NCBI RefSeq assembly: GCF_021028975.2
Contig: NC_059432.1
Coordinates: 66,030,001-66,094,000 of the forward strand
Reading direction: 5' to 3'
DNA: 64,000 nucleotides
Source: Sphaerodactylus townsendi
Taxonomy: Eukaryota
The stretch's first letter is position 1, and each line of letters starts with the position of its first letter. Under the pieces are notes generated by a model. The model saw nothing but the letters and a program-made list of their open reading frames with translations, did not search any database and was not told the origin of the DNA. Positions 29,539 through 57,141 of the stretch are shown piece by piece. Both the position numbers and the translations under genes were made by a program.

Positions 29539-29755
29539 CAGGAAGTGCTAGAAGTGTGTCAAACTCTCTGCAATTGGAGACACCAGTACTGTCTTCCGCA
29601 CAGCTGCGCCACAGGTTTTCATATATGGTGGAGGATGTAATCACACTCCCAAGATTAGAAGATACTTTCCAGTAGCTATTTGACAAAACTGCTCCAACCA
29701 TTATCCATCCACTAATACAGAATAGAAATCCAGCGATTTCTAAAATAACAGACAT
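29539..29755 (-). CDS. claudin-10/15-like, proximal first exon (10b/15-type)
   Basis: MSVILEIAGFLFCISGW...YWKVSS...YENLWRSCAEDSTGVSNCREF with W-LW-C-C signature; 217 nt, donor G|GTATG, phase 1; exons 1-5 sum to 675 nt = 224 aa + stop. Confidence 0.95.
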
Positions 29756-34557: not shown

Positions 34558-35640
34558 ATAGAATCATAGGAGTTGGAAAGGGTCATCCTGGTCATCTAGT
34601 CCAACTCCCTGCTCAATGCGGGATCAATTTAATGTTTGTCCAGCTACTACTTGAAAACTGCCAGTGTGTGTAGTTTACCACGTCCCTCGGTAGCCGATTC
34701 CACTGTTGGAAACTCTTATTGCATTTTTCCCCCCCAAAATCCAGCTGGCACCTTTCTGCTAGTAATTTAAACACATTATTGTGACTTTCTTCTGCTGCCT
34801 TTGTATAGGGCCCAGGAACCTGAACTCATCCAATGAAAACAGGTGCTTCTTAACAATTTCTCTGTCCCTGTCAGCCAGCAGCCCAGATACCGTGCTTTGC
34901 CCTCTACCATCTCTAGATGTCTGATTTCTTCTTCAGGGAAAAAACTTGAAGCAAAGTAGGCACTGAGCTTTTCTGCTTTCTCTCTGTCATCTTCCAGAGT
35001 TTCTCCATTTTCAGCTATTTCCTCTTTTATCTTGCATTTGCTCCTCACACATCTGAAGAAGATTTTTTAGTTGTAGTGAGCTTTTCTGGCCATCCTCAGC
35101 TAAGTGTGAGCTTTGGCCTCTCTGATGGCTGATCTAGAGTCCCTAGCAACCCACAGATGCTCTTCTTTAGAGGTATGTCCTTGCCTCTTCTTGAACATTT
35201 TCTTTTTTCCTCCCTTAATTCATTGTGAAATTCTCTATTCATCCACATTAGCTGATTGGATCCCCTACTATGTCTCCTTCTTGTTGGAATAGTGATGGCT
35301 TGAGCTTTCAGAGCTCTTCTTTTAGGACAGTCCACCCATCACTTGCTTCTTCCCCTTCCAGTAGTCTTGCCCATCATTGCCTCTGAGATTAGTAATGTCT
35401 GCCCTATTAAAATCTAACATACGCATGTAGCTACGAACTTCCTTGGTTCCCCATAGCAAAAGAAATTCTAGAGGACACAGTCACTTCCTTCTAAGGTCCT
35501 CAACACCTTCACCCCATCTACCATCTCTTGGCTGTTGATCAATATCAAGTTGAGTATTGCTGAACCCCTCATAGCTTCTTCTAACATTTGATAGAGGAAG
35601 TTGACAGCCAGGACAGTAAGGAACTTGTGTGACTGTAGAC
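34558..35640 (-). mobile_element. old CR1, 3' half (end of endonuclease, linker, internal deletion, 3' tail)
   Basis: - strand reads LQSHKFLTVLAVNFLYQMLEEAMRGSAILNLILIN, WMNRE, DREKAEKLSAYFAS; CR1 3' end ATAGAATCATAG...ATCTAGTCCAAC at ~34560. Confidence 0.8.
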
Positions 35641-35681
35641 CAGGGGTAGGGAACCTGCGGCTCTCCAGATGTTTACCCCAG
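35641..35681. mobile_element. collapsed 41-bp remnant of the palindromic hAT MITE (left inversion breakpoint)
   Basis: First 33 nt identical to 49424-49456 (CAGGGGTAGGGAACCTGCGGCTCTCCAGATGTT), followed directly by TACCCCAG, the terminal 8 nt with one mismatch. Confidence 0.9.
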
Positions 35682-36025
35682 GTATAGCTAGTTTAACCAG
35701 CAACTCTTCTGCAAAACCAAAACCTAAAAACTAAGCTACATATGATATAAATTACCTGCAATATTCCATTATTGAATAACTTTAAAAGTGTATATTGGTA
35801 TAAAATGGTATTCCAATAAAATTGCTATAAAATTTAAAGTTTACCTAACTAATTTTTTTCTTTGATGCTGGGTTCAGGTTACAGAAAAGTCCCTAGATTT
35901 CAATAATGTCTCCTGTAGGTTAAACCCCCCCCCCCCCAATAACCCTATTTCCTTTTTAACATAGTATGCTTAGTATAGTTTCTGAAAAGAAGGTAGATGA
36001 GATTGGATTCAGAAGTGGGACTCAC

Positions 36026-36096
36026 AGCTCCAAGTGATGGTCCAAACCTTCCTGTGGCTACTTTGCAGACATAACTTACAAATGTGGAAACAGCAC
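36026..36096 (-). CDS. PARL: presenilin-associated rhomboid-like protease, exon 7
   Basis: GAVSTFVSYVCKVATGRFGPSLGA; 71 nt; TAG|/|GTGAGT. Confidence 0.94.
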
Positions 36097-36886
36097 CTAG
36101 AAAAAATTAGTTAAGAAATTAGTTAAGAAATAACATCTCTGGAACCCAAAGCCCTTGAATATTTCTGCTTTCTGTACTAGCCATCCCTCTCACTTATCCA
36201 ACTAAACCTTTTCTAAGGAGCAGCAATGTTTAAGATGGACACAGCCCTCTTTCAGATAATTATTTTAGAAAGTTTATAAGCTGCCTCTTCAGATACCTGC
36301 TTGACTAGAATGTATACACAAGGTGAAAAGCATATCCTGTTCCCAAAGTTGCCTCAATTTAGCGCATGAAGAGCAATGCTTTCCTTTCCCCCTACCACCT
36401 CACTGGGACTTTAAAGCATGCTCTGGTCTTCTAGAAATAAAAATAGGCCTACAGGTGAGGGCAGCAATGGTATTCTATCATAGCTGGCCTCTTTCCCTCC
36501 TCTTTCCCTTTCCTTTCTTTTCCCGTTCTTTTTCTTTCCCTTCTGTTTTCCCTCTCTTTAACTCATTCTCCTTAGTTTGGTGAGAAGTTAATTTTATAGC
36601 ACCTTGTAATTCATTGTTGTAAATGTTAATCTGGTAATTTGTAAACCACACTAAGCCCATTAAGGGGAACGGCAGCCTAGAAATAAACTTATAAATAAAA
36701 TTTAAAAATAAAAATAAGACTCCCTACTTTTTTTTGCTTCTGCATACAAAACAGGCATTCTACCACTAACCACAGACCCTCCCCAAGATATAATACACAA
36801 TACATTCTAAATATCAGTCACATTTAAAGTTATTTTAGCAGCATAAATTAAACATCTAAATATAACCAAGCTTCCGAGTTTATTAC

Positions 36887-37036
36887 CGGCAGAGAAATAG
36901 ACTGCAATGAACTGCTCAGGTCCCAGAAGAGAGACTATGCTGGTTGAGAAGCTCCACAGAACATACATGTTGGCTGCCATGTGCAGAAATGAGAAATGAC
37001 TAAAGGTCGACAGCACCATAGGAAAGCACAAAACTC
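36887..37036 (-). CDS. PARL: PARL exon 6
   Basis: [49 protein letters not shown]; 150 nt. Confidence 0.96.
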
Positions 37037-38133
37037 CTAGGTAAAGAGGAAATGCTATTAGATCATTTTCTTACTATATTCACTCTTAATTTAGGAACTT
37101 ATTTGTTGGAGAAAACTTGACAATGTGTCACATCTGGGTTTCCAAAGCTATTAAGTATTGTCCATCTAACATAAAAAAAGACTAGCCGTCTAACTTCTAT
37201 ATGATAGTTGGGATGGAGTGGAAGAGACATCTTTTTGGTCAGTATGTGTATCAGTTTTTAAATTATGTATTTAATAACAATGGATGGCCCTCTTGTGCAG
37301 ATCAAAAAACCCAGGGTCTATGGCATATGCTTCTGCAAATCTAAGGTAACACTAGGGTAAAAAGAGACTGATTAATCTCAGTTCATGAGACAGTTCATGA
37401 TAGTTCACATGATAGAGACAGTTCATGAGACAGTTCACGTACTCATTAGAAAGAGATGCTGCATTAAAGCTTGACGGATTAGCTGCTTTATATTTCTTTC
37501 AGAATCCTCAGATGAAGCACAAATACATCAGCTACACTTCAGAAGAAGAAACAAGAAATAAGAGGTATTTCTTTGCCTTCTTTACTTGTCATCACAACTC
37601 ACCCCTCTTTCAGAAATCTATCCTGCTACTTCTGACTGATATATAGGTACTATTGTTTTAAAGTAAGAACTAGAATCTCTTTCACAGGATGTTCAGGGCA
37701 GAACCCATGGGTGCTGTCAGGAGTCCCAACCCATTAAAAAGTGTGGGTAACTAGTATTCCCTAGACATGGGAAGGAATCCATTCCATTTTGAGGCCATGG
37801 TTCTCCATCATATCTGCCTTTCCAACTAAAGAACTGCTCAATCAAAAAATGAAGAGTTTCATACTCTCAAATGCAAAAAGAGTACCTAACATGCACAACT
37901 CTTACCTAGTCGATATAACATAAGGAGATATTTTCAAATGTATAAGACATTCATTTTGAGCATTAATATTATCTCAGTAACTATAGCAATATCTATGTGT
38001 AGGTATTATTTTAATTCATTCATTAATTTCTAAGCAGAATCCTTTTCCTTTTACTGAATCCCCAAGTCATAAAGCCAACATAAGTATCAATTAAAAACCA
38101 AGATCTGAATCGTTACAACTACAGCATACTTAC

Positions 38134-38229
38134 GAGAAGCAGGATTAGATGTAAAATATGTGACCATTATCCGCTGCAAAGCAGGTACCCGCCATAAGCA
38201 GAATACTAAGACATTCGCTGCTATAATGC
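38134..38229 (-). CDS. PARL: PARL exon 5
   Basis: GIIAANVLVFCLWRVPALQRIMVTYFTSNPAS; 96 nt. Confidence 0.95.
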
Positions 38230-39235
38230 CTACAAATTTAAAGAGAGTTTAGTGACAAGGCTGACAATCTGGAAAATGATTCAGCTTACAATGTATACAG
38301 CCTAAGAATTATTTCTTTCTTATAAATTCAGTCACCATAAAGTTACTATTTTTAAAAGTGCATTTAAGCAAGAATTACTGAATACGTTATTGGGATAAAG
38401 TCTTGAATTTTCCGCCTAATGGCTAAGAAAATATTGGAAAAAAACAAAACATTGGGTATCCTGATGCCTGAAATAATAGGAAGGAAATATCCTGCATTAG
38501 ATAGGTAATCACTATTTTCTTAAAATGCTGATTTTTAGTTACTGAAATATTTATGTAATAAATGTGCATAAAGCAAATTGTTGTGATATCTTAGTAATAT
38601 ATACATCTTTCTAAGTACACAACTGATGCCAGGACTAACAACTGTTCAAGTGTCCTAGAAGACAGGATCATTCCACCTGAACAGATAAATAATACTCCTT
38701 TAGGAGTAATTTGGCAGCAATATGTCACAATTCTACACAGAAATTAACAGGTAAACTAATAGTGTAGATAATATTAGCATAAACAGAATATGTGCCAGGA
38801 GTGTTTGGGAACATCTCTGATATCTGTACAAGATTCAAGTTGAGGTTCTGTTTCCTCTTCTGCTTGATTGAAGGTACTAAAACCCTGGCCAAAGGCAGAG
38901 ACATAAGCCTTTGGGCAAGAACCAAAGGCCTTGAGTCTTAGCCCGTGGCTTATGCCTGTGAGTTACTCCCCCAGCAGATCTAGGACCAATCTGGAATTCA
39001 TGCTGCATATTTTTGTTTTCTCCTTCTCATTTGTTGAAATTATATTTGGAAGGCTGTGGTTGGGAGGGGGGAGCTGCTTTGGGTTGACAGCAGAGACAAA
39101 AGCAGCATATAAATCCCAACATAAATACTTAGAGAAGCAAGATTGCCCTAGGTTTAACAGCCATCCAGTAACATACTGTACCTGTGTCATATCTCTCTTC
39201 CTGAGAATGTCTAATACTTGTAAGCTAACACAAAC

Positions 39236-39284
39236 CTGACACAGCACGTTGCCCTTCACTCAAAGATTTCCACCATATGTGAAT
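39236..39284 (-). CDS. PARL: PARL exon 4
   Basis: IHIWWKSLSEGQRAVS; 49 nt; TAG|/|GT, phases fit neighbours. Confidence 0.9.
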
Positions 39285-40601
39285 CTAAAACAGAATGAAC
39301 AAAAGCCTCATCAGGATACCCAAAGTACCCAGCACCTCAAGGAATTAAATACATACATGTGAGCATGTGTAATGAATACTCTTGTCCCATAATTTCCCAA
39401 AAATAAAACTATTCAGAAATGTTTATTTTGAATGGATGAACATGATATAGTTCTTCGCTAGTTTATGAAAGAACGCAAATTAGTTGATTATTGCTTTCAT
39501 TTTAAGATCTGGTCATTTTAAGATCTTGTTTTAGACCATGAGGAAAACATACACTTGATGCATAAGAGAAGCAATAATATTCTGCTTTGTTGCCCTCTTG
39601 CATATGTTAACTAAAAAAAAGAAAAGAAAAATACCCAGTTTCAAAAGCAAGCTTATCAGAGCCATACCTTCTGACAAAGCAACAATATGACAGTGTGCAC
39701 CAGTTCCTGTGCTCTGCCTGAATTTTCTGCTTCATGGACTTTTCATGATTTATTTCTAGAATCCTGTTAAAGGAAAAAATCTCAGATCCCCATGTGAGCT
39801 TCCAATGAGTCTAATATTTCAGGCATCTGAGGTAAACCGATAAGTAGCAACCCCTAAATTTCCCTTTGTCTCTTAAATGGCAGATTCTCACTGAGGCTCA
39901 AGTCGGATTGTACAACAATGCAATCAAATAGGTGAAATCCAACAAACAATGCTCAATTTGCATAATGTGCACATTATGCCATCCAGATTTGGGGGACTGG
40001 AATATGACAATTCCATACTTTTGGATATTAATTGGTCATGGTGTATTTTTTCTGCTATGGAATAAACTCTTGCTTCCTGCTTATTTGTTCTTATTTTTAT
40101 TGATTTGATTTTGTTTTATTCGATTACCTGCATCCTCCCAAGTTGCAGGTGGGCTCAGGGCAGCTAAGACACATAATTTCAATTATAAAACAATTTAACA
40201 ATTAAATGATATAAATATTAAAAACATTCTAATATTTAAAAGCATTCACATACGGCAATTTGAATATCAGATTTTCAATCACATGCACTTGAAAGCAATA
40301 GAGATTGGTCAGCTGCCTCTTATGCCCTTGATTATGGCTTTTCAAATAAGTACAGACTCAATCCCAGAGAAGAAAACTTTAAACATATTATTTTCTTTTA
40401 CATTTGAGATCCACATGATCTTATTTCATATCATGCCAAACTCTATCAAATGGACCAAGATGCACCATGATCAGCTTTTTGTTCTACATTGAAAGTTCTG
40501 CTGTGATATAGTTTGGATTTGTAGGAGAACAATCATAATTAATGTCCTAGAAAAACTGAGGCACTTCCAAATGCCTAAGGAACAGAAATAGAGATTATTA
40601 A

Positions 40602-40878
40602 CAGCCCAATCTGGGGAGGCAAGGGGATTGATATGTGAAGGAAGCACAGGCTTGCCCTGGAGCCCTTACCCTGGTGGAGGGGCAAATACAACAGCAGGTG
40701 GATGCCATGGTCCTCTGGGAAAATTCTTGGGGGTAGAGTCGACATTAGTCAGCTTCCACCTTGGTTTTGAATGGTGTGGGGAGGGGGCTCTGTCTTTCTG
40801 TGCTGCCAGAAAGCCCTCTGGAGGCAGTGGTGCAGAAGCACTGCTGTCCCCAGCCACTTCGGTTTGTGGATTGGGCTG
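40602..40878. repeat. old element bounded by CAGCCCAAT/ATTGGGCTG inverted ends; related copy at 51111-51566
   Basis: Short terminal inverted repeats seen at both loci; interior diverged. Confidence 0.5.
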
Positions 40879-40969
40879 CCCTTGCCCAGATGGAGTGAAA
40901 ATAAGAGAACTGCCTTTTCATTTGTTCCTGTTTTTACCAAATCATTCTGAGGGTTTAAGGCTGAGAAGA

Positions 40970-41200
40970 GGAGCCAGTGTGATATAGTGGTAGAAAAAAC
41001 ACTCTAATCTGGGGACTAAGTTCAATTCCCCACTCCTCCACATGAAACTTGCTGTGTGACCTTGGGCCAGTCACAGTTTTCTCAAAAATCTTTCAGTCCA
41101 AGGAGAGGGATGCAATGGCAAACCACCTCCAAAATTATCTTAGCTTGAAACTCCTACATGGTCTCCATAAGTCAGTGTTACTTGATGGCACTTTTGACAA
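40970..41200 (+). mobile_element. squamate SINE
   Basis: Similar along its length to the copy at 621-851. Confidence 0.75.
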
Positions 41201-41799
41201 TCAAGGTTAAGAAGATGACAAAAAGCCTTGCCAGTCCTGGATCCTGCACATCAGCTCAGGACTGAGGATTCTTTTTAAGCTACTCAACGTTTTATGCTGT
41301 TTTTATGCCCTGGCTAGGTTTTAAATGGTTAACAACTTGTATCATGTTTTATGCTTTATTTTGTTAGTCAGTTCCAGCAGCTTTTATGGAGGTGGCCCCA
41401 GACATTTTCTAAATAAACTGCACAGCATAAACAACCAAATCAGTAAATATGTCCATGAAATATACAACACCCTATTATATTTCCATGGCCATCTTGGAGA
41501 CTACTAATCATCAAAACACAGTAAAAACAATGGTCATAAAAGCTAAATAAACATTCTGCTTGTGACTCGCATATTCTTAGAACTTTTTATACAAAAGGCT
41601 GAAATTATTTTCTTTGAGATTCACTAGTAAAATTAAGGTACTTTGCAAAGGCCCTAGATATTAAGACATAGCAGGGAAAGTGTTAATGAATTTGTCTACA
41701 AGAATGCACAAATGATCTACCAATTAGCACAAAGCACTTGTGTCTCAGTGAATGGTTGACAAGAACAAATTTGCAAAAATATACATAAGTTCCTCATAC

Positions 41800-41940
41800 C
41801 TCTCTCCTGATGTCCAACCCTGTACGTATCTTCATCCTATCCAACCAGTCATCTCGAGTATTCTCAAAATACCTCTGGAACTTTGCTTTGAGAGTTTCAT
41901 ATTGCCATATAGCTGCTGTGCCAAAAGCACAACCTGAAAA
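41800..41940 (-). CDS. PARL: PARL exon 3
   Basis: FSGCAFGTAAIWQYETLKAKFQRYFENTRDDWLDRMKIRTGLDIRRE; 141 nt. Confidence 0.95.
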
Positions 41941-42237
41941 CTATAAGTATAATCAAGATATAGAATAAGAGTAAAATGTGTGGGGGGAGTAGGGATAGAA
42001 TTAAAATCTGCAAACATTCAAGGTTGACAACAGAATCACAAAAGCAGTTGTATAACTAGTATAGCCAACTACAATTAATGCATATTATTAAAAACATTAA
42101 ATAATTCACTGTACATTGAATTATTGTACTTCCCTTTAAGTATGAACTACAACATCTCTAATTGCCAGACTCTGTATGGTACAAGCGTTCTGTACCTTCC
42201 ATGGGCTGGAGAATTTTGACAAACACATTCTTGTACA

Positions 42238-42400
42238 TGGGTGCTGTGTGGTTTCCGGGCTGTATGGCCGAGGATCCTCTGAAGATGGGAGCCACAGATG
42301 CAGGCAAAACGTCAGGAGAGAATGCTGCTAGAACACGGCCATACAGCCCAGAAACGACATAGCACCCAAGTGATTCCAGCCGTTAAAGCCTTCGACAATA
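42238..42400. mobile_element. short Penelope-like repeat in PARL intron 2; related copy at ~51570-51870
   Basis: CCTCTGAAGATG...GCAGGCAAAACGTCAGGAG...AAAGCCTTCGACAATACA with an inverted 5' piece; flanked by duplicated ACATTCTTGTACA. Confidence 0.6.
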
Positions 42401-42570
42401 CATTCTTGTACACTTTATTGCTGTAATGGCTCTGACTACCAAAATCCAACCTCTGTACAAGTAGGAAACCCTATTCTACAACAGTTTGTGTAACAAAATA
42501 ATAAAACAGTTTGTGTCAGCAATAAAGTATAGCTGCCAATGTAATTTAAACACACTGAAAGCAGTATTAC

Positions 42571-42763
42571 CCCAACTGTGAAGAAGAATGGCTTCAGAAG
42601 CTTCTTCACTGAATGGGAAGGTGTTGGAAAGATGACATCCTCTACCGGAGGAGACAAACCACTTCTCTGTGGTTTAGTACTGGCTTTTGAGTTAGGATTT
42701 TGGACATCGTTCTTCTGTGTTGGTCTTCTGAATCCATGTCTTTGTTGAGTATACAAGGTAGTT
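42571..42763 (-). CDS. PARL: PARL exon 2
   Basis: QQRHGFRRP...RSGLSPPVEDVIFPTP...LLKPFFFTVG; 193 nt; CAG|/|GTAAT. Confidence 0.92.
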
Positions 42764-43285
42764 CTGATCAGAAAATATATACCGAACACAAAAGAGATTA
42801 ATTTTAAATATCTCCTGCATGTGAAGATACATTATTTTCTTTATCAGAAAACAACAACAATAACATTTTCAAGCACTCCAAGATTTCATTTTGTCCCCCT
42901 CTTTAACTTTGGGTATGTATGTAAGACTTTTTCCACAAGCACTCCTAGTTGTCTTAAATGATGGAGGTACTACCAATAAAATCTTCTGGTTTCTAACACT
43001 ATAGAACTATTAGACTTAACTCCATCATCTTCATATATATATTTGTAATCCTGCGTTTCAACTGAGGGTCCTCAAGAGGTCGCTTAACAGGAAATCTCCA
43101 TGTTCATAGGTAAAGTATACTGCAAAACAATATGCTAAGCCTATACGTTGGGGAGGGGTGTGTGTGGAATCTGACTCCCAACAATAGAAAACGTCAGAAC
43201 ATGGGACGCTTATTTTCGCGTTCCCTATCTTACTCTTTTCCCAAAACGCTATCGCCCTCCTCCAGAAGGGAGCGCTTTATCGTAC

Positions 43286-43356
43286 CTACGTGCCCGAACT
43301 CCACTAGTCCATAACTCCCGTCCGACCCATACGCGAGCGCAGCAGGTCCACGCCAT
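43286..43356 (-). CDS. PARL: PARL exon 1 (mitochondrial targeting region)
   Basis: MAWTCCARVWVGRELWTSGVRAR; Kozak AAAATGG; donor AG|GTACG, phase 2 matches exon 2; lies in a CpG-rich patch. Confidence 0.88.
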
Positions 43357-43570
43357 TTTCCTCAACCCCCCAACATAACTTTTCCGGGTCGCCCAACGCT
43401 TCCGGCCGCCATCTTGGAAGCGGTAGTACTGACGCGGCATAAACACGTCACAGGTAAACAAACGAACCGGAAGGTTTGCCTGCGACGCTTGGAAGGGTTC
43501 CTCGCCTCCTAGAAGCCCGGAATCTTGTTGCGTTACATTAAAGGGATTAGGAGTCTGCCGTACGTTGTTT
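43357..43570 (-). promoter_or_regulatory. PARL CpG-rich promoter / 5' UTR
   Basis: High CpG density; YY1-type GCCGCCATCTTG (~43406-43417), ETS/GABP-type CTTCCGG (43399) and CCGGAAG (43467), typical of housekeeping mitochondrial genes. Confidence 0.7.
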
Positions 43571-43757
43571 GTGCTCTATCGTGGGCTTGTAACAGGCATT
43601 TCACAGTTCCTTGCGTGGATCTCCCAGACATTTAGGACAAGCTGTACAGTTATAAATTCTATTCGTTGCCCCTCTAATGAAAAAAAAAAAAGGGAAAACG
43701 AGTTCATTTATAACTATTGCAACTCGGTATCAATATGCTGTGCAGATTCCACTTTAA

Positions 43758-43896
43758 GGCCCCTTCGGCACATGCAGAATAAGGCACTTTCAATCCACTT
43801 TGCAGCTGGATTTTCTGTGCAGAATAGGAAAATCCACTTGCAAACAATTGTGAAAGTGGATTGAAAGTGCATTATTCTGCATGAACAGAAGGGGTC
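43758..43896. mobile_element. PIF/Harbinger-type MITE
   Basis: Palindromic GGCCCCTTC...CACATGCAGAATAA / TTATTCTGCATG...GAAGGGGTC; same family as 48150 and 59138. Confidence 0.75.
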
Positions 43897-43904
43897 AAAT
43901 TCTT

Positions 43905-44185
43905 GAAGAAGAAGAGTTTGGATTTATATCCCCCCCCCCCCTTTCGTTCCTATAGGAGACTCAAAGGGGCTTACAATCTCCTTGCCCTTCCCCCCCTCAC
44001 AACAAACACCCTGTGAGGTAGGTGGGGCTGAGAGAGCTCCAAAAATCTGTGACTAGCCCAAGGTCACCCAGTTGGCATGTGTGGGAGTGCACAGGCTAAT
44101 TTGAATTCCCTAGATAAGTGCCCACAGCTCAGGTTTTTCCAGATTAGAATGCACCTGCTCTTAACCACTACACCACTGCTGCTCC
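43905..44185 (-). mobile_element. squamate SINE
   Basis: (GAA)n tail, GAGTTTGGATTTATA...CCCAAGGTCACCCAG...CTCTTAACCACTACACCA (reverse box A). Confidence 0.8.
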
Positions 44186-45733
44186 CCTGCATACACCTGC
44201 AAGGCAGTCTCATTGACTGAGGATGCTGGAATAAATCTCACCCTGAACATTCAAGAACACGTATTACAGGACTGCACACCTCTTACAAACTTGCTGAATC
44301 AACATCATCTTCAAAAATATGTTTCAAAACTGATGTGTTCAGTTAACAATCACTGTTTAAAGAAATTCACATTGAAGCTCTTATCTTAAATGCTTTTTCC
44401 ATTTCAGTGCATTTGTAGTTCTTAACTGTTTAATAAAACCTTTATTTAATGTAATGTTATTCAACCAATTCATTTTTGAATGGTGGTCAGGGAAATTGAC
44501 AAAAGTTGGTCAAAGAAAATTGCGGAAATGGAAAATAAATTTTTAGAGGTAACCCTGGATTGAGCAAATCCCCTTGAGAAAATGGTCTTTTGGAGGGTGG
44601 ACTCTGTTATGTTATACCTCATTGAGGCTTCTCTTTGCCTTCCCAAGGTTCCACACCCAAATCTCCAGGAATTTCCCAGTCCAGAGTGGATGATTGTACA
44701 GTGAAATACTGGAGAATTATGATATTGTAATCTTTATGAGACACCTGGATTCCATACCTCACTTCCAGGTGCAAGAAAGAAGGCCTTTTTGTGCTCAAAA
44801 TTTGGAAATACATCAATTCAAAGTGGACAGCATCAAAAAACCCACACAAGGGACTGTCACTGTAACCTTGAGGCTTGGTGATTGTAATTCTCTCTACTTG
44901 AATCTGATCTTAAAGTCTTTTCAGAAACTCCAGCTATCACAGAATACTACAACTCAGTTTCTACATTGGGGCATATTATGAACTTATTAATGTTACAAAT
45001 GGAGCAAATAGATATATTTTTAACTCATCCATAAAACTAGGTTGATGCCCAGTTACTCTCCAAAATCATACATTCATATTTGAAAAGAAAAAAATGGGGT
45101 GAGGGTTTACTTGGGAGCAGAAAAAGGAGAAAAAGCACCCTACCTATTTATTAATCCTCTACAGTAAGAGTCTTCCATCTATATATTATCCCCCTGAATA
45201 TTGTACTGGTTCCCATGTGTGCAAAGATAACATCTAATTTTCCCCTAATTTCTGTCTGCAGTGTAGAATCAATGAACCTGTCTGCTTTACAGTACACTGG
45301 CCTGAAGGCAGATGATACAACAATTGTGTCAATGTGGATCGGAACACTGTGCATGCTATCTTGAGCAGGGAATATCAGGAATGAAAACAGGGTATAAGGG
45401 TATTATGCAAGTTATTGTAAGGATTGCTGAATTGATGTATGTGAATTCCAGAGGGATATATGTGTTAATCTATTGCAGCCCAAGTGGAAGAGTTTTGTGG
45501 CATTTTAAAGACAAGTCTACGGTGGCCCAAGCTTTCATTAGCCTACTTCTTCAGATACAGCAAGAATTACGTTCATTTGGCAGAGAGATTTACAAGCAGC
45601 AACAGGGGCATTTTATAAAAGAGCAGCAGACCTAATTTTCAGGATGGGCAGCCCAATTCCAATAACTACCTGATTTTCCATCAGATATTCTCCCAAGTAT
45701 AGATAAATAACAACAGATGCCCTTCTGTGAGGG

Positions 45734-46610
45734 CATTATACTACGCCACTGGCCGCCTCGGGTAACATTAAGTAATTTGTAGCCTGTGCAACATAGTGAG
45801 GCGAGGGAAGCCGCGGTTCTTCAAAAAGCAACCTATTTTAGATCTGAAGTGGCTGCTGCCGGTCGGGCAGGGGAAACGCCGAGTTTCAAAGCCAACCGCT
45901 AGAACTTTTATACAATAATACATCAAAGAGTATAGGGGGCAGGTAAGGGGGCAGGTCCCTTACCATACAACAATAAAGAAACATCAACACATAAAAGAAA
46001 AGGTACAATTACAACTTTGTGAATGGGACCATGAGATCTCACTGTCAGGTGACTTTTCACGAGACTTTACGATAGTGCTGAAATGGAGAGCGGAGAGAGT
46101 CCCATTCATAAAACTGGGTGAGCCTGTTTAACGCACCCAGGAATCTGGTTATCAGATGGGCTGCTTTCTTGAGTTATGAACTGCGCCTCAGTCCCGCAAC
46201 TGCGCCTCAGTCCCGCAACAAAAGAAAGTTCAAATGGTCCAGTGGTGATCTTGGCACGTTCTTCAATGGCTGGGATTTCTGGGGTGCTGTTATCAGATTC
46301 CGCTCTCTGTAGAATCTGGAAGCGGGTCCTTGTTTCTGCTAAAAAGATCTACTGGTAAGCTAGCCTAAAACTGAATTCTAAGGCTAGCTTCCCTTTGGCT
46401 CTTAATATCAGCTAGCAAGGGCAGTTTTCATTGTCATTGCTTTTACCCATAGATACGGATATTTAAAATAACATTTCTAAACTTAAACATTAGAGAAAAC
46501 CTAGGAGCCACCAATACAGTACAAGCACATATACGTAACCAAAGCCTTAAATACTGGAAAACCTAGCTAGAGCATAATCCTAAACACTGGGCAAATAATA
46601 AATCCAACAC
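45734..46610 (-). mobile_element. unclassified LTR-like insertion
   Basis: Flanked by TGAGGG direct repeats (45728-45733, 46611-46616); CpG-retaining; - strand begins (G)TGTTGG; internal 19-bp tandem duplication at 46179-46216. Confidence 0.45.
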
Positions 46611-47229
46611 TGAGGGGGACTTTTGAACAACACTGGTCTCTTTGCTCTGATCTTTAGCCAGTGTGGTGACAGGCTCAGGAAAATATTTTTCTTATTTTCC
46701 TGGTGGTAACAATATGGCATAGTGTCTGGAAAGCCTTGATTTTTAGCATGAGGGGGAAAGGTTGTAAAGCATTACGAAATACTTTTTCTGTTTGCAAAAC
46801 TGACCCCCAACCTGCTGATGCAACTCTGCACTGGAACGTTGACAAGGGAACACAAGTTTTACAACAGTAAGTACAACATTCTGTTTTTTTGGAAATTTGA
46901 ATCTATATAATATATTTCAGCAAATATGGTGAAATATTTTAAACTTTTAATTGGATTATTTGGTTCAAAATATATTAGAAATGTGTAAATTAATTATATA
47001 TAAATGCATGAAAAATCTAATCTACACTGCATGCTCAAAAATAACATTTGGCATATATTTACATAAAAATATTTAATATATTTTCTTTGTTGAGTGTTTA
47101 TTTTCATGCATAGCTCAATAGTGTGCCTAATACACATTGTTTGATCTCTATTGCTAGAACATCAATCTTTTGAATAGACCTCTGGTATCAGCATCTATAA
47201 GACAAAACTCCAAAACTTTTCATTGAAGA

Positions 47230-47449
47230 ATGGCATCGGCATCTTTTCAGATCTCTGGATTACTTCTGGCTGCTCTGGGTTTTATCCTTTTACTTGTTGC
47301 CACTGTGTCCAATAGCTGGAAAATTTCCAGTTCAACAAACCCAATTATTCCTGCAAGCTGGATCTATGAAGGTCTCTGGATGAACTGTGCAACTACTAAT
47401 TTGGCCTTGGTTCGGTGTAAGAGATTCTCTTTCTTCCTAAGTTTAGACA
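47230..47449 (+). CDS. orphaned claudin first exon, claudin-10a-like; probable distal alternative exon 1 of the - strand claudin
   Basis: MASASFQISGLLLAALGF...WKISS...SWIYEGLWMNCATTNLALVRCKRF; 220 nt, consensus donor A|GTAAGT, phase 1; no claudin exons 2-5 found downstream on +. Confidence 0.9.
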
Positions 47450-48149
47450 GTAAGTGTATTTTTCCTTGCATAAAATGCTAGACTGTAATTTTTCTTGAAA
47501 GACTGAATAGCAAACCTAGATTCTCCAGCATTTAGTAGATACATACAAAACACTGTTATGCGTAGAACTTTAGGGAATAACAATAGTATATTCTGTGATG
47601 AAATTTGATGTCAGAACACCTAATGTTGTGTGTTACTCATGAAGGCATCAGTCGCACACAGCAACTTGATTGGTGGGTATCTCTGTGGACTCCGATGAGG
47701 TCACTATGTGGTCTGAATCTTAGCAGGGAATGTTTGTCATATTTCCCCTCTGTGGAATGATCATGGGATACCAGCTCGTAGCCACAGACTGCCATCAGTG
47801 TCCGGGTTCTTAAGGTAGGGTTAGCTTGTTTCTGCTGCACTCTATGCCACCATTGCAAGTGTATATTATTTTTGCCGTCTGAGACACAGAAAAAAATTAA
47901 AATAGAAAACACATCTTGGAATAAATAAAAGAATGATCTAGGGTGAGAGAAAGAGCAGGGGACAGAACTGTTAGCAAGGTGAATGTTAGTTTTCCTTTCC
48001 TAAACTGCTAAAAGGCATTAACTGAGATTGTCGTGTGAAAGGACAGTTTGAGAGGTGAGGGCATGGCCCTTTGAATTTTAAGACTCCTCCTCACCAGAGG
48101 TATGATTTTGGCATGAGCCAAAGGATGAAAGCTAAAGCTGTGTCTCTTA

Positions 48150-48288
48150 GGCTCATCCGCACATGCAGAATAATGCACTTTCAAACTGCTTTCAATGCTC
48201 TTTGAAGCTGTGCGGAATGGCAAAATCCACTTGCAAACAGTTGTGAAAGTGGTTTGAAAAGCACTATTTTGCGTGTGCGGAAGGGGCC
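48150..48288. mobile_element. PIF/Harbinger-type MITE
   Basis: TIRs GGCTCATCCGCACATGCAGAATAA / TATTTTGCGTGTGCGGAAGGGGCC; 3-bp TSD TTA. Confidence 0.82.
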
Positions 48289-48429
48289 TTAGCCTGGAAA
48301 TTGGGCCTGGTGGTCCCATAAGTCATTAAGAAGCTTTTACATTGTTATACTTGTTACCCCTTTTGGCTTAGGTAAATATTTTGTCAGGTCTGTAAGTTTC
48401 AGGTTAGGTCAACACACCAAGATATTTCT

Positions 48430-49423
48430 AGGGAGAAAGAATCCACTTGGAAAAGGGTGATGAATCCTCATGGACCATTTCCAGTCACTTGTAAACCAGA
48501 TCCCAAAACTGATCATAACTCATTTTTATGGTCCATGTGGCAACCAATGACATGCCCTTGAACACCATCAAAAGCATTAAGACTGACTATGAAGCTCCCA
48601 GGAGAAATCTTAAGGGAATGGGCCAAAGTGGTGTTCTCTTTGATCCTTCCTGTCAGAGGAAGAGGAATGAAATGGGGACAGAAGATAATGGAGGAACCAC
48701 TGGCTATATTGGTGGTGCTAGGAGGAGCAATTTGGATTCTGGCACAATGGGCTTGGTTTTCTGGACAATGACCTTCTGTCATGCAGTGGACTTTACCTAT
48801 CAAAGTCAGGGAATCATGGGTTTGAAAGATACCTGGGGAGATTCACCAGGAGGGCTTTAAACTCCCGGGAAAGGAGACCAACATAGAGATTTAGAGAGAG
48901 AACAAACAGCAGAATCCCACCCGGGAGGTCCAGGTCTAATAGAGAAGAAGGTATGGGGCTTCAGCTGACTTATGTACTAATGTCTCAAGCTTGGGCAATA
49001 AGGAGGAAGAACTTGAGCTTTTAATGCAGAGGGATATGATTTTGTAGGCATTACAGAGACTTGGTGGGATGATTCCCATTACTAGAATATAGTACTAGAT
49101 GGACATGAGTTGTTCAAGAAAAACCAAAAGGGTCAAAGAGGTGGTGGAGTGACACTGTATGTGAGGCAAGGGTTTGCTTGTCAGGAAATACTGGAAGAGG
49201 TGGTGACAGCCCTGTGGAAACTATCTGGGTAAGGATAAGGGGAGGAAGGACAAACAGTATTGTGGTTGGAGTCTGCTACAGACCTTCTAGCTAGGGTGAG
49301 GAAGTGGATGCTGCTCTCCTTGAACAGCTTGACAGGGTATCCAAACAACATGACCTGGTAATTATGGGTGACTTCAACTTGCCTGATTAATGCTGGGAGA
49401 CAAACTCTGCAAACCGTCTACAG
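48430..49423 (+). mobile_element. old CR1, 5' half (ORF1 esterase end, start of ORF2 endonuclease)
   Basis: VHVATND; SLGNKEEELEL; VGITETWWD; RGGGVTLYV; VGVCYRP; VIMGDFNLPD-x-CWETNSANRLQ, stopping at the MITE; 5' boundary approximate. Confidence 0.82.
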
Positions 49424-49571
49424 CAGGGGTAGGGAACCTGCGGCTCTCCAGATGTTCAGGAACTACAATTCCCATCAGCCTCTGTCAGCATGGCCAATTG
49501 GCCATGCTGGTAGGGGCTGATGGGAATTGTAGTTCCTGAACATCTGGAGAGCCGCAGGTTCCCTACCCCTG
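49424..49571. mobile_element. 148-bp palindromic hAT (Charlie-like) MITE (right inversion breakpoint)
   Basis: Near-perfect hairpin centred on GGCCAATTGGCC; ends CAGGGGTAGGGAACC / GGTTCCCTACCCCTG; non-matching flanks GTCTACAG and AGCTATAC. Confidence 0.93.
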
Positions 49572-50488
49572 AGCTATACTGATGATCTTGACTTCCACTG
49601 TAAACACTTATCTTGGATCAAGTACTACTGTTGTAATTAAATATGTTCCTAGTAATTGTCACAGAGAGTTACAGTTTTACTACTTGACTGATCCTGTGTA
49701 TACGGAGTCTGTACTGCCACATCATGTTCAAGGGAATTTATCATAAACAAGACTGCAATACTGTGCAAACCTAAGACTGAACTGAACTTGGTGATATTTG
49801 CTAAATAAACTTGCATAGGGTCAGGCTACAAGTTGGCACAGAACTGTAAACTTACTTGGGTTTGCCAGTGTTGCAAATACATTGGATATGTTGTAACTGT
49901 TGTAGTTTTCATGACAGTGTTTTGTTATTGCACACATTCTTGGTGGTGGTGAAAAATGCTGGCAAGGTTTAGCTGACTTATAGTGACCCCATAGGGTTTT
50001 CAAGGCAAGAGATGTTCAAAGTTGTTTTGCCATTGACTGCTTCTGTGTCATTGTGTCTTGTTGGTCTCCCATCTGAATGCTAACCAGGGCCAACATTGCT
50101 TAGCTTCCAAAGTCCCATGAGATTGAGCTAGCTTGGGCTATCCAATCAGGGCAAGTTCTTCCTAATCATTTTAGATCAAAGAATCTTTGTATCTGAGTAA
50201 AGATGCTGTGATTTCTTAAGCAATTTGCCTCATACCTTTCATTGAAATAATTATTTTCAAACGGCTGTTGAATGCTGCAGTGTTTGGGAACTTTGAAACT
50301 AGTATAGCTGGGCTCCTACTGCATCCTTTCTCCTTCTTACATATTTTCTAACTTATTGGACCTGGAATATGAATTGGTAAGTTTCTGTTCTAAAAGGAAA
50401 TGAATATACTTGCCTGATGTTGCAGAGTGCTGGAATGTACTCATGTGTTAACATTCTTAATTTAACTTGTATTTTAATGTAATTCTAG

Positions 50489-50590
50489 TCAGGTGCTATA
50501 ATGACCGTCCTTGCAGCCGTATGTACTAAGATGCCAGAAGCCAAGCTAGCCATAATATTTCTCCCAATGTTCACATTTACAGCTGGAAAT
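50489..50590 (+). CDS. PARL: PARL exon 8 (catalytic Ser of GASG)
   Basis: SGAIMTVLAAVCTKMPEAKLAIIFLPMFTFTAGN; 102 nt; TAG|/|GTAAGT. Confidence 0.96.
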
Positions 50591-51910
50591 GTAAGTAACT
50601 TTTTTTTGTTTCTGCATATTAGTTCCCTGACCATACTTTTGTTTTATCGGTATTTCAAAGCTGCATGCATATTTAAGTTAATTTCACCACAAGAGACACA
50701 TCCATTGCACTGTGCTCTGTTACACTAAAGAGCAGTGTATATTGGGATTATATTGTGCCATTTCACTTTTGAGCAGGCAGAATTCTGACATTTCTAGCTG
50801 TTTTACAAATACATTGCCAGGATCCAGAACCCTTCCTTGGATGTGACAGTCGGCATGGGGTTGGACTGTGAACAGTAGATCTCCTTGCCACATCATGATC
50901 TGCTTTTGAATGTTTCCCTCATTCCTCCTCCCACATCAGCATCAGTATCCTAGTGTCTGAGATTTGATATTTTAAATGCTGGTTTCGTTAATAACCACTG
51001 GAGGAAAAAAGTTTAGAATTGGGGGACTTTTTCAGAAGTTAACTAATGGCAGCTTTGGTACAGTTTTAATGCTCCAGTAGTAGGTTTTCTGGCACAGTTT
51101 AGCTGACAGGCAGCCCAATTAGGTGGGGAGGGGGGTGCACCCTTACAGCCAATGCGGGGCTGCACTGGCACATTTGCCCACCCCACTGGTGTAAGTGGAG
51201 GGCAAACTGGGAAGCAGGTGGGCACTGTGGACCTCGGTGGCATCTGACCCAGGAGAGAACCCAGCCCCTAGAGCTGTTTCTGTGTGCAGAAGGACACCCG
51301 AATGACTGGGGGCGTTCCAGGGGCATTCTAGGGGTGGGTGGAGCCAACTTTAGTCAGATTCCACCGGTCCTTGGAGCTGGAAACATCCCAATGTATTTCT
51401 TGAACAGGTGATACAAGTCTGTTTTGGGCTATGGAGGGCTTTCAGGTGGCTAGAGAGTTTGTGGTGTTTGCTGCCTCTCTACGCTGCCTGGAAGCCCTCT
51501 GGAAGGCAGGACAGAAGTGTGCCAGTGATGCCATCCCCAGCTGCTTGAGCCCTGTGGATTGGGCTGTATATGCTATATTTTCCAAAATAAAACCAGAACT
51601 GGCTGTTGTGAGTTTTCCAAGCAGTGTGGCAGTGGTCTGGTAGTTTTTGATCCTAATATTTTGCCTGCATCTATGACTGGTATCTTCAGAGGCATATTTT
51701 GGTGATATGTGTTTCTGTTGTGCAGTGTAGAAATACATCTCACATGCCTCTGAAGACTGCCACCCATAGATGGGCGCAAAATGTTAGGAGCAAAAACTAC
51801 CAAACCATGACCTCATAACCTGGAAAACCCACAGTTGATTCTGGCTATGAAAGTCTTCAATAATACAAAAACATAATTCTTTAATCTGCTAAAGTTGGTA
51901 TAGTTTGCCA

Positions 51911-52705
51911 ATCCAATCCAAAAACCTTTATTAGGCATAAAACAGAAGTACCATACATTCCAAGTACAATAACAGGATCGTTGTTACACATCATGTAGAA
52001 CACGGATTAAAAATGTGGCAACTGCTTCAAAAATTTCTACATGAGGGCTGTTCAGTAGCTTAGACATTTTTAGTTTGTCTGAGAAAAACATAAATTCTAG
52101 AGGTAGTAAAGCTCCCAGATCGGTTCTAATATCATTATACCTCGAACAGTAAAGCAGGATATGAGGAATTGAGTCCATTGTGTTGGAACAGAACCGACAA
52201 CAATACTCACTTTGTGGGATGTTAAGGAAACGACCTTGAAGATAGACAGAGGGGAATGAGTTGCACCTTGCTCTGGTCATACCCATCTGCACTTATAGTT
52301 GACAAGCTGTTCTAAATATACAGCAGGGCTAGATTTCTGGGGTGTGATCCCAAGGTATAGAGGGGAACAAGAGCTTTGCGCAGCACTTAGGAGAGATTGG
52401 TATTCCTGATCATACAGTCTGGTCTTTAGACGATGGTAAATTTCCGTGGTGGTAAGCATATGAAGAGACTCCAATGAGAAACCCAAGGAGAAGATTTTTT
52501 TTTTTTCAATATGAAGCCACCACTTTGAAAGCCAAGCTCCCTCATTTCTAGCAGAGATAAGCTTTTTGGATCTGTGCCGAAGCATAGACGCAGCCAAAAC
52601 TTAAATGTTACAGCCCATGCCCTAGTTTCTAATAGATGTTGCCTTGACTCCAGACAAAGCACACCATAAGGGACACAATGTGGGGTGCCAAATATCTTAT
52701 ATAGG
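51911..52705 (-). mobile_element. 5'-truncated LINE (ORF2 C-terminus with CCHC knuckle; clade uncertain, RTE-X-like) in PARL intron 8
   Basis: CRFC...HILLYC motif; AATAAA followed by a (TTGGA)n tail; perfect 14-bp TSD GGTATAGTTTGCCA (51897-51910, 52706-52719). Confidence 0.8.
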
Positions 52706-52904
52706 GGTATAGTTTGCCACTTTGTTAGTTTGGGGTTTTTCCATCTCTTGTCCTAATTATGATACAGCTTGTCGCTAATTTTTTTTCTCACCCAGACTGC
52801 TTCTGTTTACCTGTGGTGAGCAATAGGCTTGGAGACAATGATTTTCTCAGTCCATTGAGTCTGAGGTGGAAGCCAATGCCACAGTAGCACTAGACTGCTC
52901 TTTA

Positions 52905-53363
52905 TAAAACTATACATAGGATGGAGAAAGTGAACTGAAAGAGCCTTTTCTCCTTTTCCCATAATTGTGGAGCTCAAGACACCCAATTAAGTTGGTGGGC
53001 AGTAGGTTCAGGACACACACAAAAAATACTTCTTCCCTCAATGGTAATTAAATTGTGGGATTTGCTGCCAGCAGACGTAATGATGGCCACTATCATAGAT
53101 ATCTTTAAAAGGAGGTTAGCTAGATTAATGGAGAATAGGTCTATTAATGATTACTAGCCATAGTGACTAAAGGCTGAATATGACTTCTTATGCAGAGGCA
53201 GTAAACCTCTGAATACTAGATCTAGGAGGCAACATCAGAAACAGGCCTTGGCCTCTGTGCCCTTTTTCTTGGCCCTCCAGGGCAACTGTTTAGCTGCTGT
53301 GTGAGACAAGACGCTGCACTAGATGCACCACTGCTCTTGTATATCAGGAATCTTGTGTTCTTA
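52905..53363 (+). mobile_element. old CR1 3' fragment
   Basis: Similar to 5370-5840 (TGATGGCCAC...TTTAAAAG...ATGGAG...CACTAGATG...TGTTCTTA). Confidence 0.75.
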
Positions 53364-53508
53364 ATGGCTGTTGCCTTTGTATGGCAGAAGAGAATATTTT
53401 ATGAGGAATGTTCTGTGATATTGCTGTTTTTGATCAGTTGAAAAATAAATTTAATTTTCCTGACTCCTGGAATATTAACCAAAGCCATACTTGTTTACTT
53501 ACTTCTAG

Positions 53509-53606
53509 GCTTTAAAAGCTATTATTGCAATGGACAGTGCAGGACTTGTTTTGGGTTGGAAGTTTTTTGACCATGCTGCTCACCTTGGGGGAACTCTGTT
53601 TGGCAT
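53509..53606 (+). CDS. PARL: PARL exon 9 (catalytic His)
   Basis: [32 protein letters not shown]; 98 nt. Confidence 0.96.
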
Positions 53607-53820
53607 GTAAGTTTTTAAAATTATGTATACACTATGTTATTATGGCAGTGTTACTTCACTTCATATTGAAAATAGAGCTGAGAAATATAGTTGTTCTGAT
53701 GTTATTGACACTAAGCTATTGTTGAGAATTGTTTTCAGCCAATGGCCTCATGTTAATGTATCTGGTAAATGTTTGTTATATCTGTAATGCATTATATGAT
53801 GGTGTTTGTTTTGCTTTAAG

Positions 53821-53917
53821 GTGGTATGTAACATTTGGGAATGAACTTATCTGGAAGAACAGAGAACCACTGGTAAAGCTTTGGCATAACATAAGGACTG
53901 GGAGTTCAAAGAAGTGA
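53821..53917 (+). CDS. PARL: PARL exon 10
   Basis: WYVTFGNELIWKNREPLVKLWHNIRTGSSKK*; AATAAA at 54080-54085; ten exons sum to 1068 nt = 355 aa + stop. Confidence 0.95.

Positions 53918-56388: not shown

Positions 56389-57141
<753 letters not shown>

What the first reader, a model, noticed from the sequence alone, without database searches (positions are those of the whole stretch)
35633..49579. 13.7-kb inversion between two palindromic MITEs with swapped TSDs splits PARL across opposite strands
Seen: PARL exons 1-7 are on - and exons 8-10 on +, all with intact frames and splice sites. Two copies of one hAT MITE sit at 35641-35681 and 49424-49571. The left copy is flanked by CTGTAGAC and GTATAGCT, the right by GTCTACAG and AGCTATAC. 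CTGTAGAC is the reverse complement of GTCTACAG and GTATAGCT of AGCTATAC, so reversing 35682-49423 gives each MITE a perfect 8-bp TSD and restores a colinear 355-aa PARL with a ~1.4 kb intron 7, co-oriented with MAP6D1 as in human. Established: hAT elements make 8-bp TSDs; the rhomboid catalytic Ser (first codon of exon 8, GA|SG) and His (exon 9, HLGG) would both be missing from an exon 1-7 transcript, and Parl loss is lethal postnatally in mice. Inference: because the MITE is a palindrome, any two copies act as inverted repeats. This is either a very recent or heterozygous ectopic-recombination inversion, or an assembly mis-join at the hairpins. The lack of exon decay argues against an old fixed event; trans-splicing rescue is a remote possibility.
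Basis: partly seen in the sequence, partly recalled or inferred. Interest (0 to 1): 0.92.

Follow-up and report, generated by a model that had tools for sequence, protein, structure and literature searches.

The report
Gecko PARL split by flipped segment
In the Townsend's least gecko reference genome, a 13.7-kb stretch between two copies of a palindromic mobile element lies back to front and splits the essential mitochondrial protease gene PARL; this is more likely an assembly orientation error than a real inversion, but the public data could not settle it.

Summary
Two copies of one palindromic MITE (41 bp and 148 bp) bound window 35682-49423. Their 8-bp flanks are exact reverse complements of each other, pair by pair. 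PARL exons 1-7 lie on the minus strand and exons 8-10 on the plus strand, all intact, giving 355 codons.

A LINE endonuclease reading frame is cut the same way, which independently shows that the un-inverted order is ancestral. Contigs from two related species and a second individual leave the window exactly at both edges of the left MITE.

The window is Sphaerodactylus townsendi GCA_021028975.2. That assembly is a 10x/Supernova build, rescaffolded with ARCS, gap-closed with about 3.5x Nanopore reads, polished, and scaffolded with 3D-DNA.

The inverted and un-inverted orders share every k-mer up to k=34, so the only public data served (31-mer contigs) cannot tell them apart. The contig from the probable source individual does not follow the assembly through the 41-bp MITE.

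My odds:
- Assembly mis-orientation: about 0.62.
- A real, segregating MITE-mediated inversion: about 0.30.
- A fixed event: excluded in practice.

If real, it would be a new example of a known mechanism, as in the Galileo inversions of Drosophila.

The parts
35633..35640 (.). Left flank of MITE-L, CTGTAGAC. It is one half of the site-1 target duplication.
   Evidence: It is the exact reverse complement of 49416-49423.
35641..35681 (.). MITE-L, a 41-bp remnant: the 33-nt terminal repeat plus TACCCCAG (the last 8 nt of the other end, with one T>A change).
   Evidence: The interior joint GATGTT|TACCCCAG is not followed by the X1 contig (record 8).
35682..35689 (.). Right flank of MITE-L, GTATAGCT. 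It is one half of the site-2 target duplication, reverse-complemented.
   Evidence: It is the exact reverse complement of 49572-49579.
35682..49423 (.). The 13,742-bp segment that lies inverted relative to the ancestral order. It carries PARL exons 1-7, about 5.9 kb of PARL upstream sequence, and one half of a LINE.
36026..43356 (-). PARL exons 1-7: 43286-43356, 42571-42763, 41800-41940, 39236-39284, 38134-38229, 36887-37036, 36026-36096. Together 771 nt, or 257 codons.
   Evidence: Pfam Rhomboid hits the exon 6 piece.
49416..49423 (.). Left flank of MITE-R, GTCTACAG.
49424..49571 (.). MITE-R, a full 148-bp palindromic MITE with 74-nt arms that are 96% complementary.
   Evidence: I1.
49572..49579 (.). 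Right flank of MITE-R, AGCTATAC.
50489..53917 (+). PARL exons 8-10: 50489-50590, 53509-53606, 53821-53917 (including the stop). They carry the catalytic Ser (first codon of exon 8) and the His of the HLGG motif.
   Evidence: Pfam Rhomboid hits the exon 9 piece.
48900..49423 (+). Upstream half of a decayed CR1-like LINE endonuclease region, ending ...VIMGDFNLPD*CWETNSANRLQ at the MITE-R flank.
   Evidence: Weak Pfam Exo_endo_phos_2 hit, profile 17-42.
34600..35640 (-). Downstream half of the same LINE, starting LQSHKFLTVLAVNFLYQ...GSDCVL at the MITE-L flank. The flank codons CTA CAG (Leu-Gln) are in frame on both halves.
56557..57141 (+). MAP6D1 exon 1, on the same strand as PARL exons 8-10. 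It identified the genome.
   Evidence: P0044, 100% identity, Sphaerodactylus townsendi..

Best explanation
The inversion is most likely an orientation error in the reference assembly rather than a feature of the gecko's chromosomes.

What I take to be real: two very young insertions of a high-copy palindromic hAT-like MITE. One sits in a LINE about 5.9 kb upstream of PARL (target CTGTAGAC). The other sits in PARL intron 7 (target AGCTATAC).

Why the order is ambiguous to an assembler: the element reads almost the same on both strands, so the 13.7 kb between the two copies can be walked in either direction through a k-mer graph without changing the k-mer content.

What I infer happened: the Supernova/ARCS/TGS-GapCloser/NextPolish pipeline chose the wrong direction. 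It left a garbled 41-bp MITE at one of the two false joints. On this reading the true gene is a colinear 10-exon, 355-codon PARL followed by MAP6D1.

Shown here: the swapped flanks, the split PARL gene and split LINE, the k-mer equivalence, the assembly method, and the departure of other genomes' contigs at the junction.

Inferred: that the source animal itself carries the un-inverted order.
For: 1. The window is S. townsendi GCA_021028975.2.

2. The authors built it from 10x linked reads with Supernova, then Tigmint, ARCS, TGS-GapCloser with 6.6 Gb of Nanopore reads, NextPolish and 3D-DNA. That Supernova works on a short-k-mer graph and that barcodes orient short segments poorly is my own knowledge.

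3. The window and the un-inverted form have identical canonical k-mer sets for every k up to 34. If both MITEs are full length in the animal, the equivalence would reach much larger k (inference).

4. X1 is identical to the window over 5.4 kb at about 70x depth, so it is probably the source animal. Its contig running from PARL exon 7 towards MITE-L matches only as far as 35674. It then carries 16 letters that do not fit the assembly's GATGTT|TACCCCAG joint (record 8). The assembly is therefore not faithful at exactly this joint.

5. X1's contigs enter MITE ends at both flanks without stopping at 35640 or 35682, so no empty-site allele appears in its contigs.

6. All ten exons keep their frames and splice sites. 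Both catalytic residues lie on exons 8-9. From my own knowledge, loss of Parl is lethal after birth in mice. A homozygous break in an adult reference male is therefore unlikely.

7. The submitter's annotation calls no gene over exons 8-10, as expected for a gene the assembly has broken.
Against: - There is no run of N at either joint. A mis-oriented piece usually keeps its gaps, and a gap closer normally needs a read that spans the joint in that orientation.
- At k=48, 28 k-mers are specific to the window's form with the 41-bp element. If Supernova itself wrote this joint, those k-mers should have been in the reads.
- The 41-bp remnant, with both termini kept and the interior lost, looks like a natural product of aborted gap repair.
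- Swapped target duplications are the classic mark of real ectopic recombination between transposon copies (PMC2775673).
- The family is clearly active and polymorphic in this species.
- I had no spanning reads. 31-mer contigs cannot test orientation.
Confidence: 0.62

Rival explanations
1. The inversion is real, very recent, and segregating in S. townsendi. On this reading the reference male carries it on one chromosome. It arose by exchange between the two MITE copies: either homologous recombination inside the terminal repeats, or repair of a transposase-made break at one copy using the other copy as template with crossover. The second route would also explain the 41-bp remnant as aborted gap repair. 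The inverted chromosome would be a PARL null, tolerated when heterozygous.
For: - Both pairs of 8-bp flanks are exactly swapped. This is the signature described for Galileo-made inversions (PMC2775673).
- Both joints are gapless.
- The family is very abundant, with summed contig depth about 1e6 against about 70 for single-copy DNA. Its terminal repeats are perfect.
- Both flanks of the left MITE run on in non-window sequence in a second S. townsendi and in two related species. This suggests very recent insertions and therefore recent activity.
- The remnant keeps both termini.
Against: - It needs two young insertions, an exchange between repeats only 33-148 bp long, and a loss-of-function allele of an essential gene, all in the one animal chosen as reference.
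- The junction interior is not reproduced by that animal's own contig.
- The assembly method is prone to exactly this error.
- Nothing in the k-mer data favours it over the un-inverted order.
Confidence: 0.3
2. The inversion is fixed or homozygous in the species. PARL is then either lost or rescued by trans-splicing of an exon 1-7 RNA to an exon 8-10 RNA.
For: Only that exons and splice sites are intact on both strands.
Against: - In a second S. townsendi (X3), both flanks of MITE-L run on in 22 letters that do not fit the window.
- In two related species they run on for 87-89 and 423-424 letters. The arrangement is therefore not shared.
- There is no exon decay.
- No RNA run was available.
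Confidence: 0.03
3. The joint comes from chimeric molecules made during library preparation, by template switching at the palindromic MITEs in the 10x amplification step. The assembler then accepted these molecules.
For: It would explain read-backed k-mers for a joint that does not exist in the genome. It would also explain an odd 41-bp element not seen in the main contig path.
Against: No microhomology at the GATGTT|TACCCCAG joint would guide a template switch (my reading). Two matching false joints 13.8 kb apart would be needed. This was not tested.
Confidence: 0.05

Closest known systems
Galileo-generated inversions 2j, 2q7 and 2z3 of Drosophila buzzatii (Delprat et al. 2009, PMC2775673)
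   Same: A transposon copy sits at each breakpoint, in opposite orientation, with exchanged target site duplications. That paper takes this pattern as proof of ectopic recombination. As here, the element has long inverted termini and is recently active.
   Different: Galileo belongs to the P superfamily and makes 7-bp duplications. Those inversions are megabase-scale and were verified on chromosomes and by PCR in natural populations. Here the element is a 148-bp hAT-like MITE with 8-bp duplications, the segment is 13.7 kb, it breaks a gene, and its existence outside the assembly is unproven.
BuT5, a MITE that generated fixed inversions in the Drosophila repleta group (PMC3698922)
   Same: A non-coding miniature element at inversion breakpoints.
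   Different: BuT5 is about 1 kb, P-related, and the inversions are fixed and cytologically visible. I did not read this paper beyond its abstract.
Ac/Ds (hAT) alternative-transposition inversions in maize p1/p2 (bioRxiv 10.1101/2021.03.08.434479)
   Same: hAT-superfamily ends on two nearby copies produce inversions that alter genes.
   Different: Alternative transposition creates a new 8-bp duplication at a new target, and one breakpoint is not a pre-existing insertion. Here both joints are pre-existing insertions with swapped flanks. That fits exchange between copies, or mis-assembly, but not alternative transposition. I saw the abstract only.
Orientation errors of short segments between repeats in graph- and barcode-based assemblies (my own knowledge, not a citation)
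   Same: A segment bounded by inverted copies of one repeat can be traversed either way through the graph. Linked-read barcodes and Hi-C cannot orient pieces of about 10-20 kb reliably.
   Different: Such errors usually keep N gaps at the joins. Here both joins are gapless.

Membership tests
hAT-superfamily MITE | 8-bp target site duplication flanking each copy | tested here: met
   In place it is not met: 4/8 matches at each copy. After turning the segment round, both copies get perfect 8-bp duplications, CTGTAGAC and AGCTATAC.
hAT-superfamily MITE | Terminal inverted repeats, no coding capacity, high copy number | tested here: met
   The 33-nt perfect termini sit in a 148-bp element that is 96% self-complementary. 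Summed contig depth over the repeat is about 1e6 against about 70 for single-copy DNA in X1.
hAT-superfamily MITE | Target preference nTnnnnAn | tested here: inconclusive
   CTGTAGAC fits. AGCTATAC fits only at position 7. Most other copies share TAGAC, preceded by GTC, before the terminus (table 7), suggesting a GTCTAGAC-like preference. The consensus nTnnnnAn is from my own knowledge.
hAT-superfamily MITE | Termini shared with an autonomous element that encodes a hAT transposase | not tested
   No autonomous partner was looked for. A literature search for the terminus found nothing.
Transposon-mediated inversion by ectopic recombination (Galileo type) | Transposon copies at both breakpoints with exchanged target site duplications | tested here: met
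   The criteria are as listed in PMC2775673.
Transposon-mediated inversion by ectopic recombination (Galileo type) | Both copies chimeric | tested here: inconclusive
   MITE-L combines a standard left end with a variant right end (T>A). The family consensus and its arm asymmetries could not be established from the data served.
Transposon-mediated inversion by ectopic recombination (Galileo type) | The un-inverted arrangement exists in relatives or other individuals | tested here: met
   This is indirect. Contigs of X3, X4 and X5 leave the window exactly at 35640 and 35682. The 423-424 letters fit the distance from 49580 to a SINE-like repeat at about 49963-50045. The split LINE frame and split PARL give the ancestral order. 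The overhanging letters themselves were not shown to me.
Transposon-mediated inversion by ectopic recombination (Galileo type) | The inverted arrangement is shown on real DNA molecules that span the breakpoints | not testable with these tools
   Only 31-mer contigs were served. The two orders are identical in k-mers up to k=34.
PARL (mitochondrial rhomboid protease) | Rhomboid domain with a catalytic Ser in GxSG and a catalytic His | tested here: met
   Pfam PF01694 hits the exon 6 and exon 9 pieces. ...GA|SGA spans the exon 7/8 border, and HLGG lies in exon 9.
PARL (mitochondrial rhomboid protease) | Conserved position next to MAP6D1 on the same strand | tested here: met
   It holds for exons 8-10 and MAP6D1, which are both on plus. 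It fails for exons 1-7 as assembled. The human gene order is from my own knowledge.
Assembly mis-orientation | Both orders are compatible with the k-mer graph, and the pipeline lacks spanning information | tested here: met
   k-mer sets are identical for k<=34. The pipeline was Supernova, ARCS, and about 3.5x Nanopore gap closing.
Assembly mis-orientation | The junction sequence is not reproduced by the source individual's reads | tested here: inconclusive
   X1 record 8 departs from the window at 35674. However, contig building may have dropped a second allele, and X1's identity with the source animal is inferred from zero differences, not stated.

The most novel reading that the evidence does not exclude
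The inversion is real. An active, palindromic hAT-like MITE family in Sphaerodactylus townsendi has just produced a 13.7-kb inversion by exchange between two insertions that are themselves still polymorphic. The result is a segregating null allele of the essential mitochondrial protease PARL, carried heterozygously by the reference male. The 41-bp remnant would then record the break-repair event.
Probability: 0.3. Interest if true: 0.55.

Novelty: not a real feature. Interest (0 to 1): 0.25.

Why it matters
If it is an artefact, the value is practical:
- PARL is broken and unannotated over exons 8-10 in the S. townsendi reference.
- The same error may recur wherever two copies of this very abundant palindromic MITE lie close together, so a genome-wide check for swapped 8-bp flanks would find and fix such flips.

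If it is real, it would be a rare vertebrate case of a MITE-made inversion caught while the insertions are still polymorphic. The breakpoints would be at base resolution, and an essential gene would be knocked out on the inverted chromosome. The mechanism itself is already known from Drosophila and maize.

Tried and rejected
1. Reads. It did not print the overhanging letters at 35640 and 35682, so I could only use their lengths.

2. Fetching the contigs themselves.
- An exact look-up of one ORF near the junctions found nothing.
- A look-up of ten more also found nothing.
- These geckos' contigs are not in the protein collection.

3. RNA evidence for the exon 7-8 junction. A protein search with the exon 8 piece returned 43 fragments from other vertebrates and none from this species. 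Three of them (P0017, P0019, P0029) look mammalian and may be human-like. I did not look up their contigs or use them further.

4. Pfam on the downstream LINE half gave no hit. LINE continuity rests on the shared reading frame across the flank codons and on the known motif order of this endonuclease type.

5. No other copy of this LINE in the window spans the site.

6. Earlier notes of this scan held nothing relevant.

7. Literature searches for the MITE terminus and for a PARL inversion in lizards found nothing.

8. Alternative transposition and cut-and-rejoin at the MITE edges were rejected. They would leave a new duplication or footprints, and all four 8-bp flanks are untouched.

9. The 22-letter overhangs in X3 equal k-1-8. 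That is the length expected when an empty site shares its 8-bp target with a filled allele in the same graph. I could not explain why the nearer fork is passed while the farther one stops the contig, so X3 being heterozygous remains an inference.

Only exon lengths and phases were added up.


Full report
**What is there**

- Left junction: CTGTAGAC, then a 41-bp element at 35641-35681, then GTATAGCT.
- Right junction: GTCTACAG, then a 148-bp element at 49424-49571, then AGCTATAC.

The 148-bp element is a near-perfect palindrome: 142/148 self-complementary, with 74-nt arms that are 96% complementary.

The 41-bp element is a remnant of the same family. It consists of the perfect 33-nt terminal repeat joined to TACCCCAG, which is the last 8 nt of the other end with one T>A change.

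The 33-mer occurs three times in the window and nowhere else, with none expected by chance. Each flank on the left is the exact reverse complement of one flank on the right. In place, each element's own two flanks agree at only 4 of 8 positions (my reading).

**The gene**

All ten PARL exons are present once, with AG/GT borders.
- Seven lie on the minus strand between 36026 and 43356.
- Three lie on the plus strand between 50489 and 53917.

Their lengths add to 1068 nt, which is 355 codons plus a stop. Exon 7 ends in phase 0 and exon 8 begins with the serine codon of the GxSG motif. Turning the segment round would give an intron 7 of 1409 nt.

Pfam places the first part of one Rhomboid domain on the minus-strand exon 6 piece and the last part on the plus-strand exon 9 piece. 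I did not build or search a joined protein; only lengths and phases were added up.

**Independent proof of the ancestral order**

A decayed CR1-like LINE endonuclease frame runs on the plus strand up to the left flank of the right MITE, ending ...VIMGDFNLPD*CWETNSANRLQ. It continues on the minus strand from the left flank of the left MITE as LQSHKFLTVLAVNFLYQ...GSDCVL.

The flank codons CTA CAG (Leu-Gln) are in the LINE's frame on both halves. The sequences at 49423 and 35640 were therefore once joined, and a MITE inserted there with an 8-bp duplication. This agrees with the PARL exon order and with MAP6D1 lying downstream on the plus strand.

**Which genome, and how it was built**

MAP6D1 exon 1 matches the Sphaerodactylus townsendi protein at 100% identity. 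The fetched locus from GCA_021028975.2, CM037621.2, overlaps the window with no mismatch. The window is therefore 66,030,001-66,094,000 of that record. The submitter's annotation lists no gene over PARL exons 8-10.

The authors' preprint (10.1101/2021.08.13.456260) describes these steps:
- 10x linked reads assembled with Supernova
- Tigmint
- ARCS
- gap filling by TGS-GapCloser with 6.6 Gb of Nanopore reads
- NextPolish
- two rounds of 3D-DNA

The roughly 3.5x Nanopore coverage is my estimate. It assumes a genome of about 1.6-1.9 Gb, taken from the contig totals.

**What public reads could and could not say**

Only 31-mer contigs were served, with no RNA and no raw reads.

I computed that the window and the un-inverted form obtained by exchange inside the terminal repeats have identical canonical k-mer sets for every k up to 34. 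They differ by 28 k-mers at k=48. Such contigs therefore cannot test orientation.

The X1 contig has TACCCCAG directly beside GTATAGCT.

The lay on 33000-38900 gave four useful facts.
1. **X1.** It shows no difference from the window over 5.4 kb at depth about 70, so it is probably the source male. Its contigs enter MITE ends at both flanks without stopping at 35640 or 35682. The contig coming from the PARL exon 7 side fits the window only to 35674. It then has 16 letters that do not fit the assembly's GATGTT|TACCCCAG joint.
2. **X3, a second animal of the same species.** Both flanks run on for exactly 22 letters that do not fit the window. Twenty-two equals k-1-8, the length expected for an empty site that shares its 8-bp target with a filled allele. 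That reading is an inference.
3. **X4 and X5, two related species.** The left flank runs on for 89 and 87 letters and the right flank for 423 and 424 letters, none fitting the stretch. A SINE-like repeat starts about 384 nt beyond the right MITE. A contig running from PARL intron 7 across an empty site would break at just that distance.
4. **The family.** It is very abundant, with summed depth about 1e6 against about 70. Most copies share TAGAC, preceded by GTC, before the terminus, which suggests a GTCTAGAC-like target preference.

So the insertions are young and polymorphic, and the left junction is not shared by another conspecific or by relatives. A fixed inversion is in practice excluded.

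**Weighing artefact against real inversion**

For an artefact:
- The assembly method is of the kind in which a 13.7-kb piece between two copies of a high-copy palindrome can be walked either way.
- The assembly's sequence at one of the two joints is not reproduced by the probable source animal's own contig.
- PARL is intact exon by exon and essential in mice (my own knowledge), and the reference was an adult male.

For a real inversion:
- Both joints are gapless.
- At Supernova's k the 41-bp joint needs its own k-mers.
- A remnant keeping both termini is what aborted gap repair leaves.
- Swapped duplications are the accepted mark of ectopic recombination between transposon copies (PMC2775673).
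- The family is evidently active.

I put mis-orientation at about 0.62, a real segregating inversion at about 0.30, library chimeras at about 0.05, and a fixed or trans-spliced state at about 0.03.

**Comparison with what is known**

If real, this is the Galileo pattern of Drosophila buzzatii in a gecko, made by a hAT-like MITE and breaking a gene. That would be a new member of a known kind. Alternative transposition as in maize Ac/Ds does not fit, because both joints are old insertions with untouched flanks.

**Handling notes**

Three protein fragments returned look mammalian (P0017, P0019, P0029). I did not trace their contigs or use them further.

Noticed in passing
window 7240-7794 (+): A long open frame with a dual-specificity phosphatase catalytic domain (Pfam DSPc, E 2e-24, profile 1-115 of 133). 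It is probably a single-exon part of a DUSP gene upstream of PARL.
   Followed up: partly
window 29462-29779 (-) and 14624-14905 (-): Two exons of a claudin-family gene on the minus strand (Pfam PMP22_Claudin, profile 3-60 and 58-110). A roughly 15-kb intron between them holds a LINE.
   Followed up: partly
window 19993-22118 (-): An L1-like LINE with long open frames: a 280-aa ORF1-like frame (weak L1 RBD-like hit) and a 256-aa endonuclease frame (Exo_endo_phos, E 2e-12). It is possibly a young copy.
   Followed up: partly
window 49963-50045, 13423-13504, 756-827: Three copies of a SINE-like repeat, 76-78% alike. The one in PARL intron 7 probably ends the related species' contigs.
   Followed up: partly
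window 43760-43894, 48162-48194, 42235-42371, 51607-51833: Further short hairpin-like inverted repeats, probably other MITE families. One family has copies at 43851-43883 and 48162-48194, both inside the inverted segment and near the PARL promoter.
   Followed up: no
L001 1-10000 (= window 46557-56556): The submitter's annotation of GCA_021028975.2 lists no gene over PARL exons 8-10. Only MAP6D1 and YEATS2 are called in this locus.
   Followed up: partly
window 35626-35656 (X1 record 3): The X1 contig from the left flank stops only 16 nt into the MITE terminus, although 15 nt of flank are still in the last k-mer. This suggests another LINE copy elsewhere with a MITE at the same site, or a second allele. 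It is unexplained.
   Followed up: no
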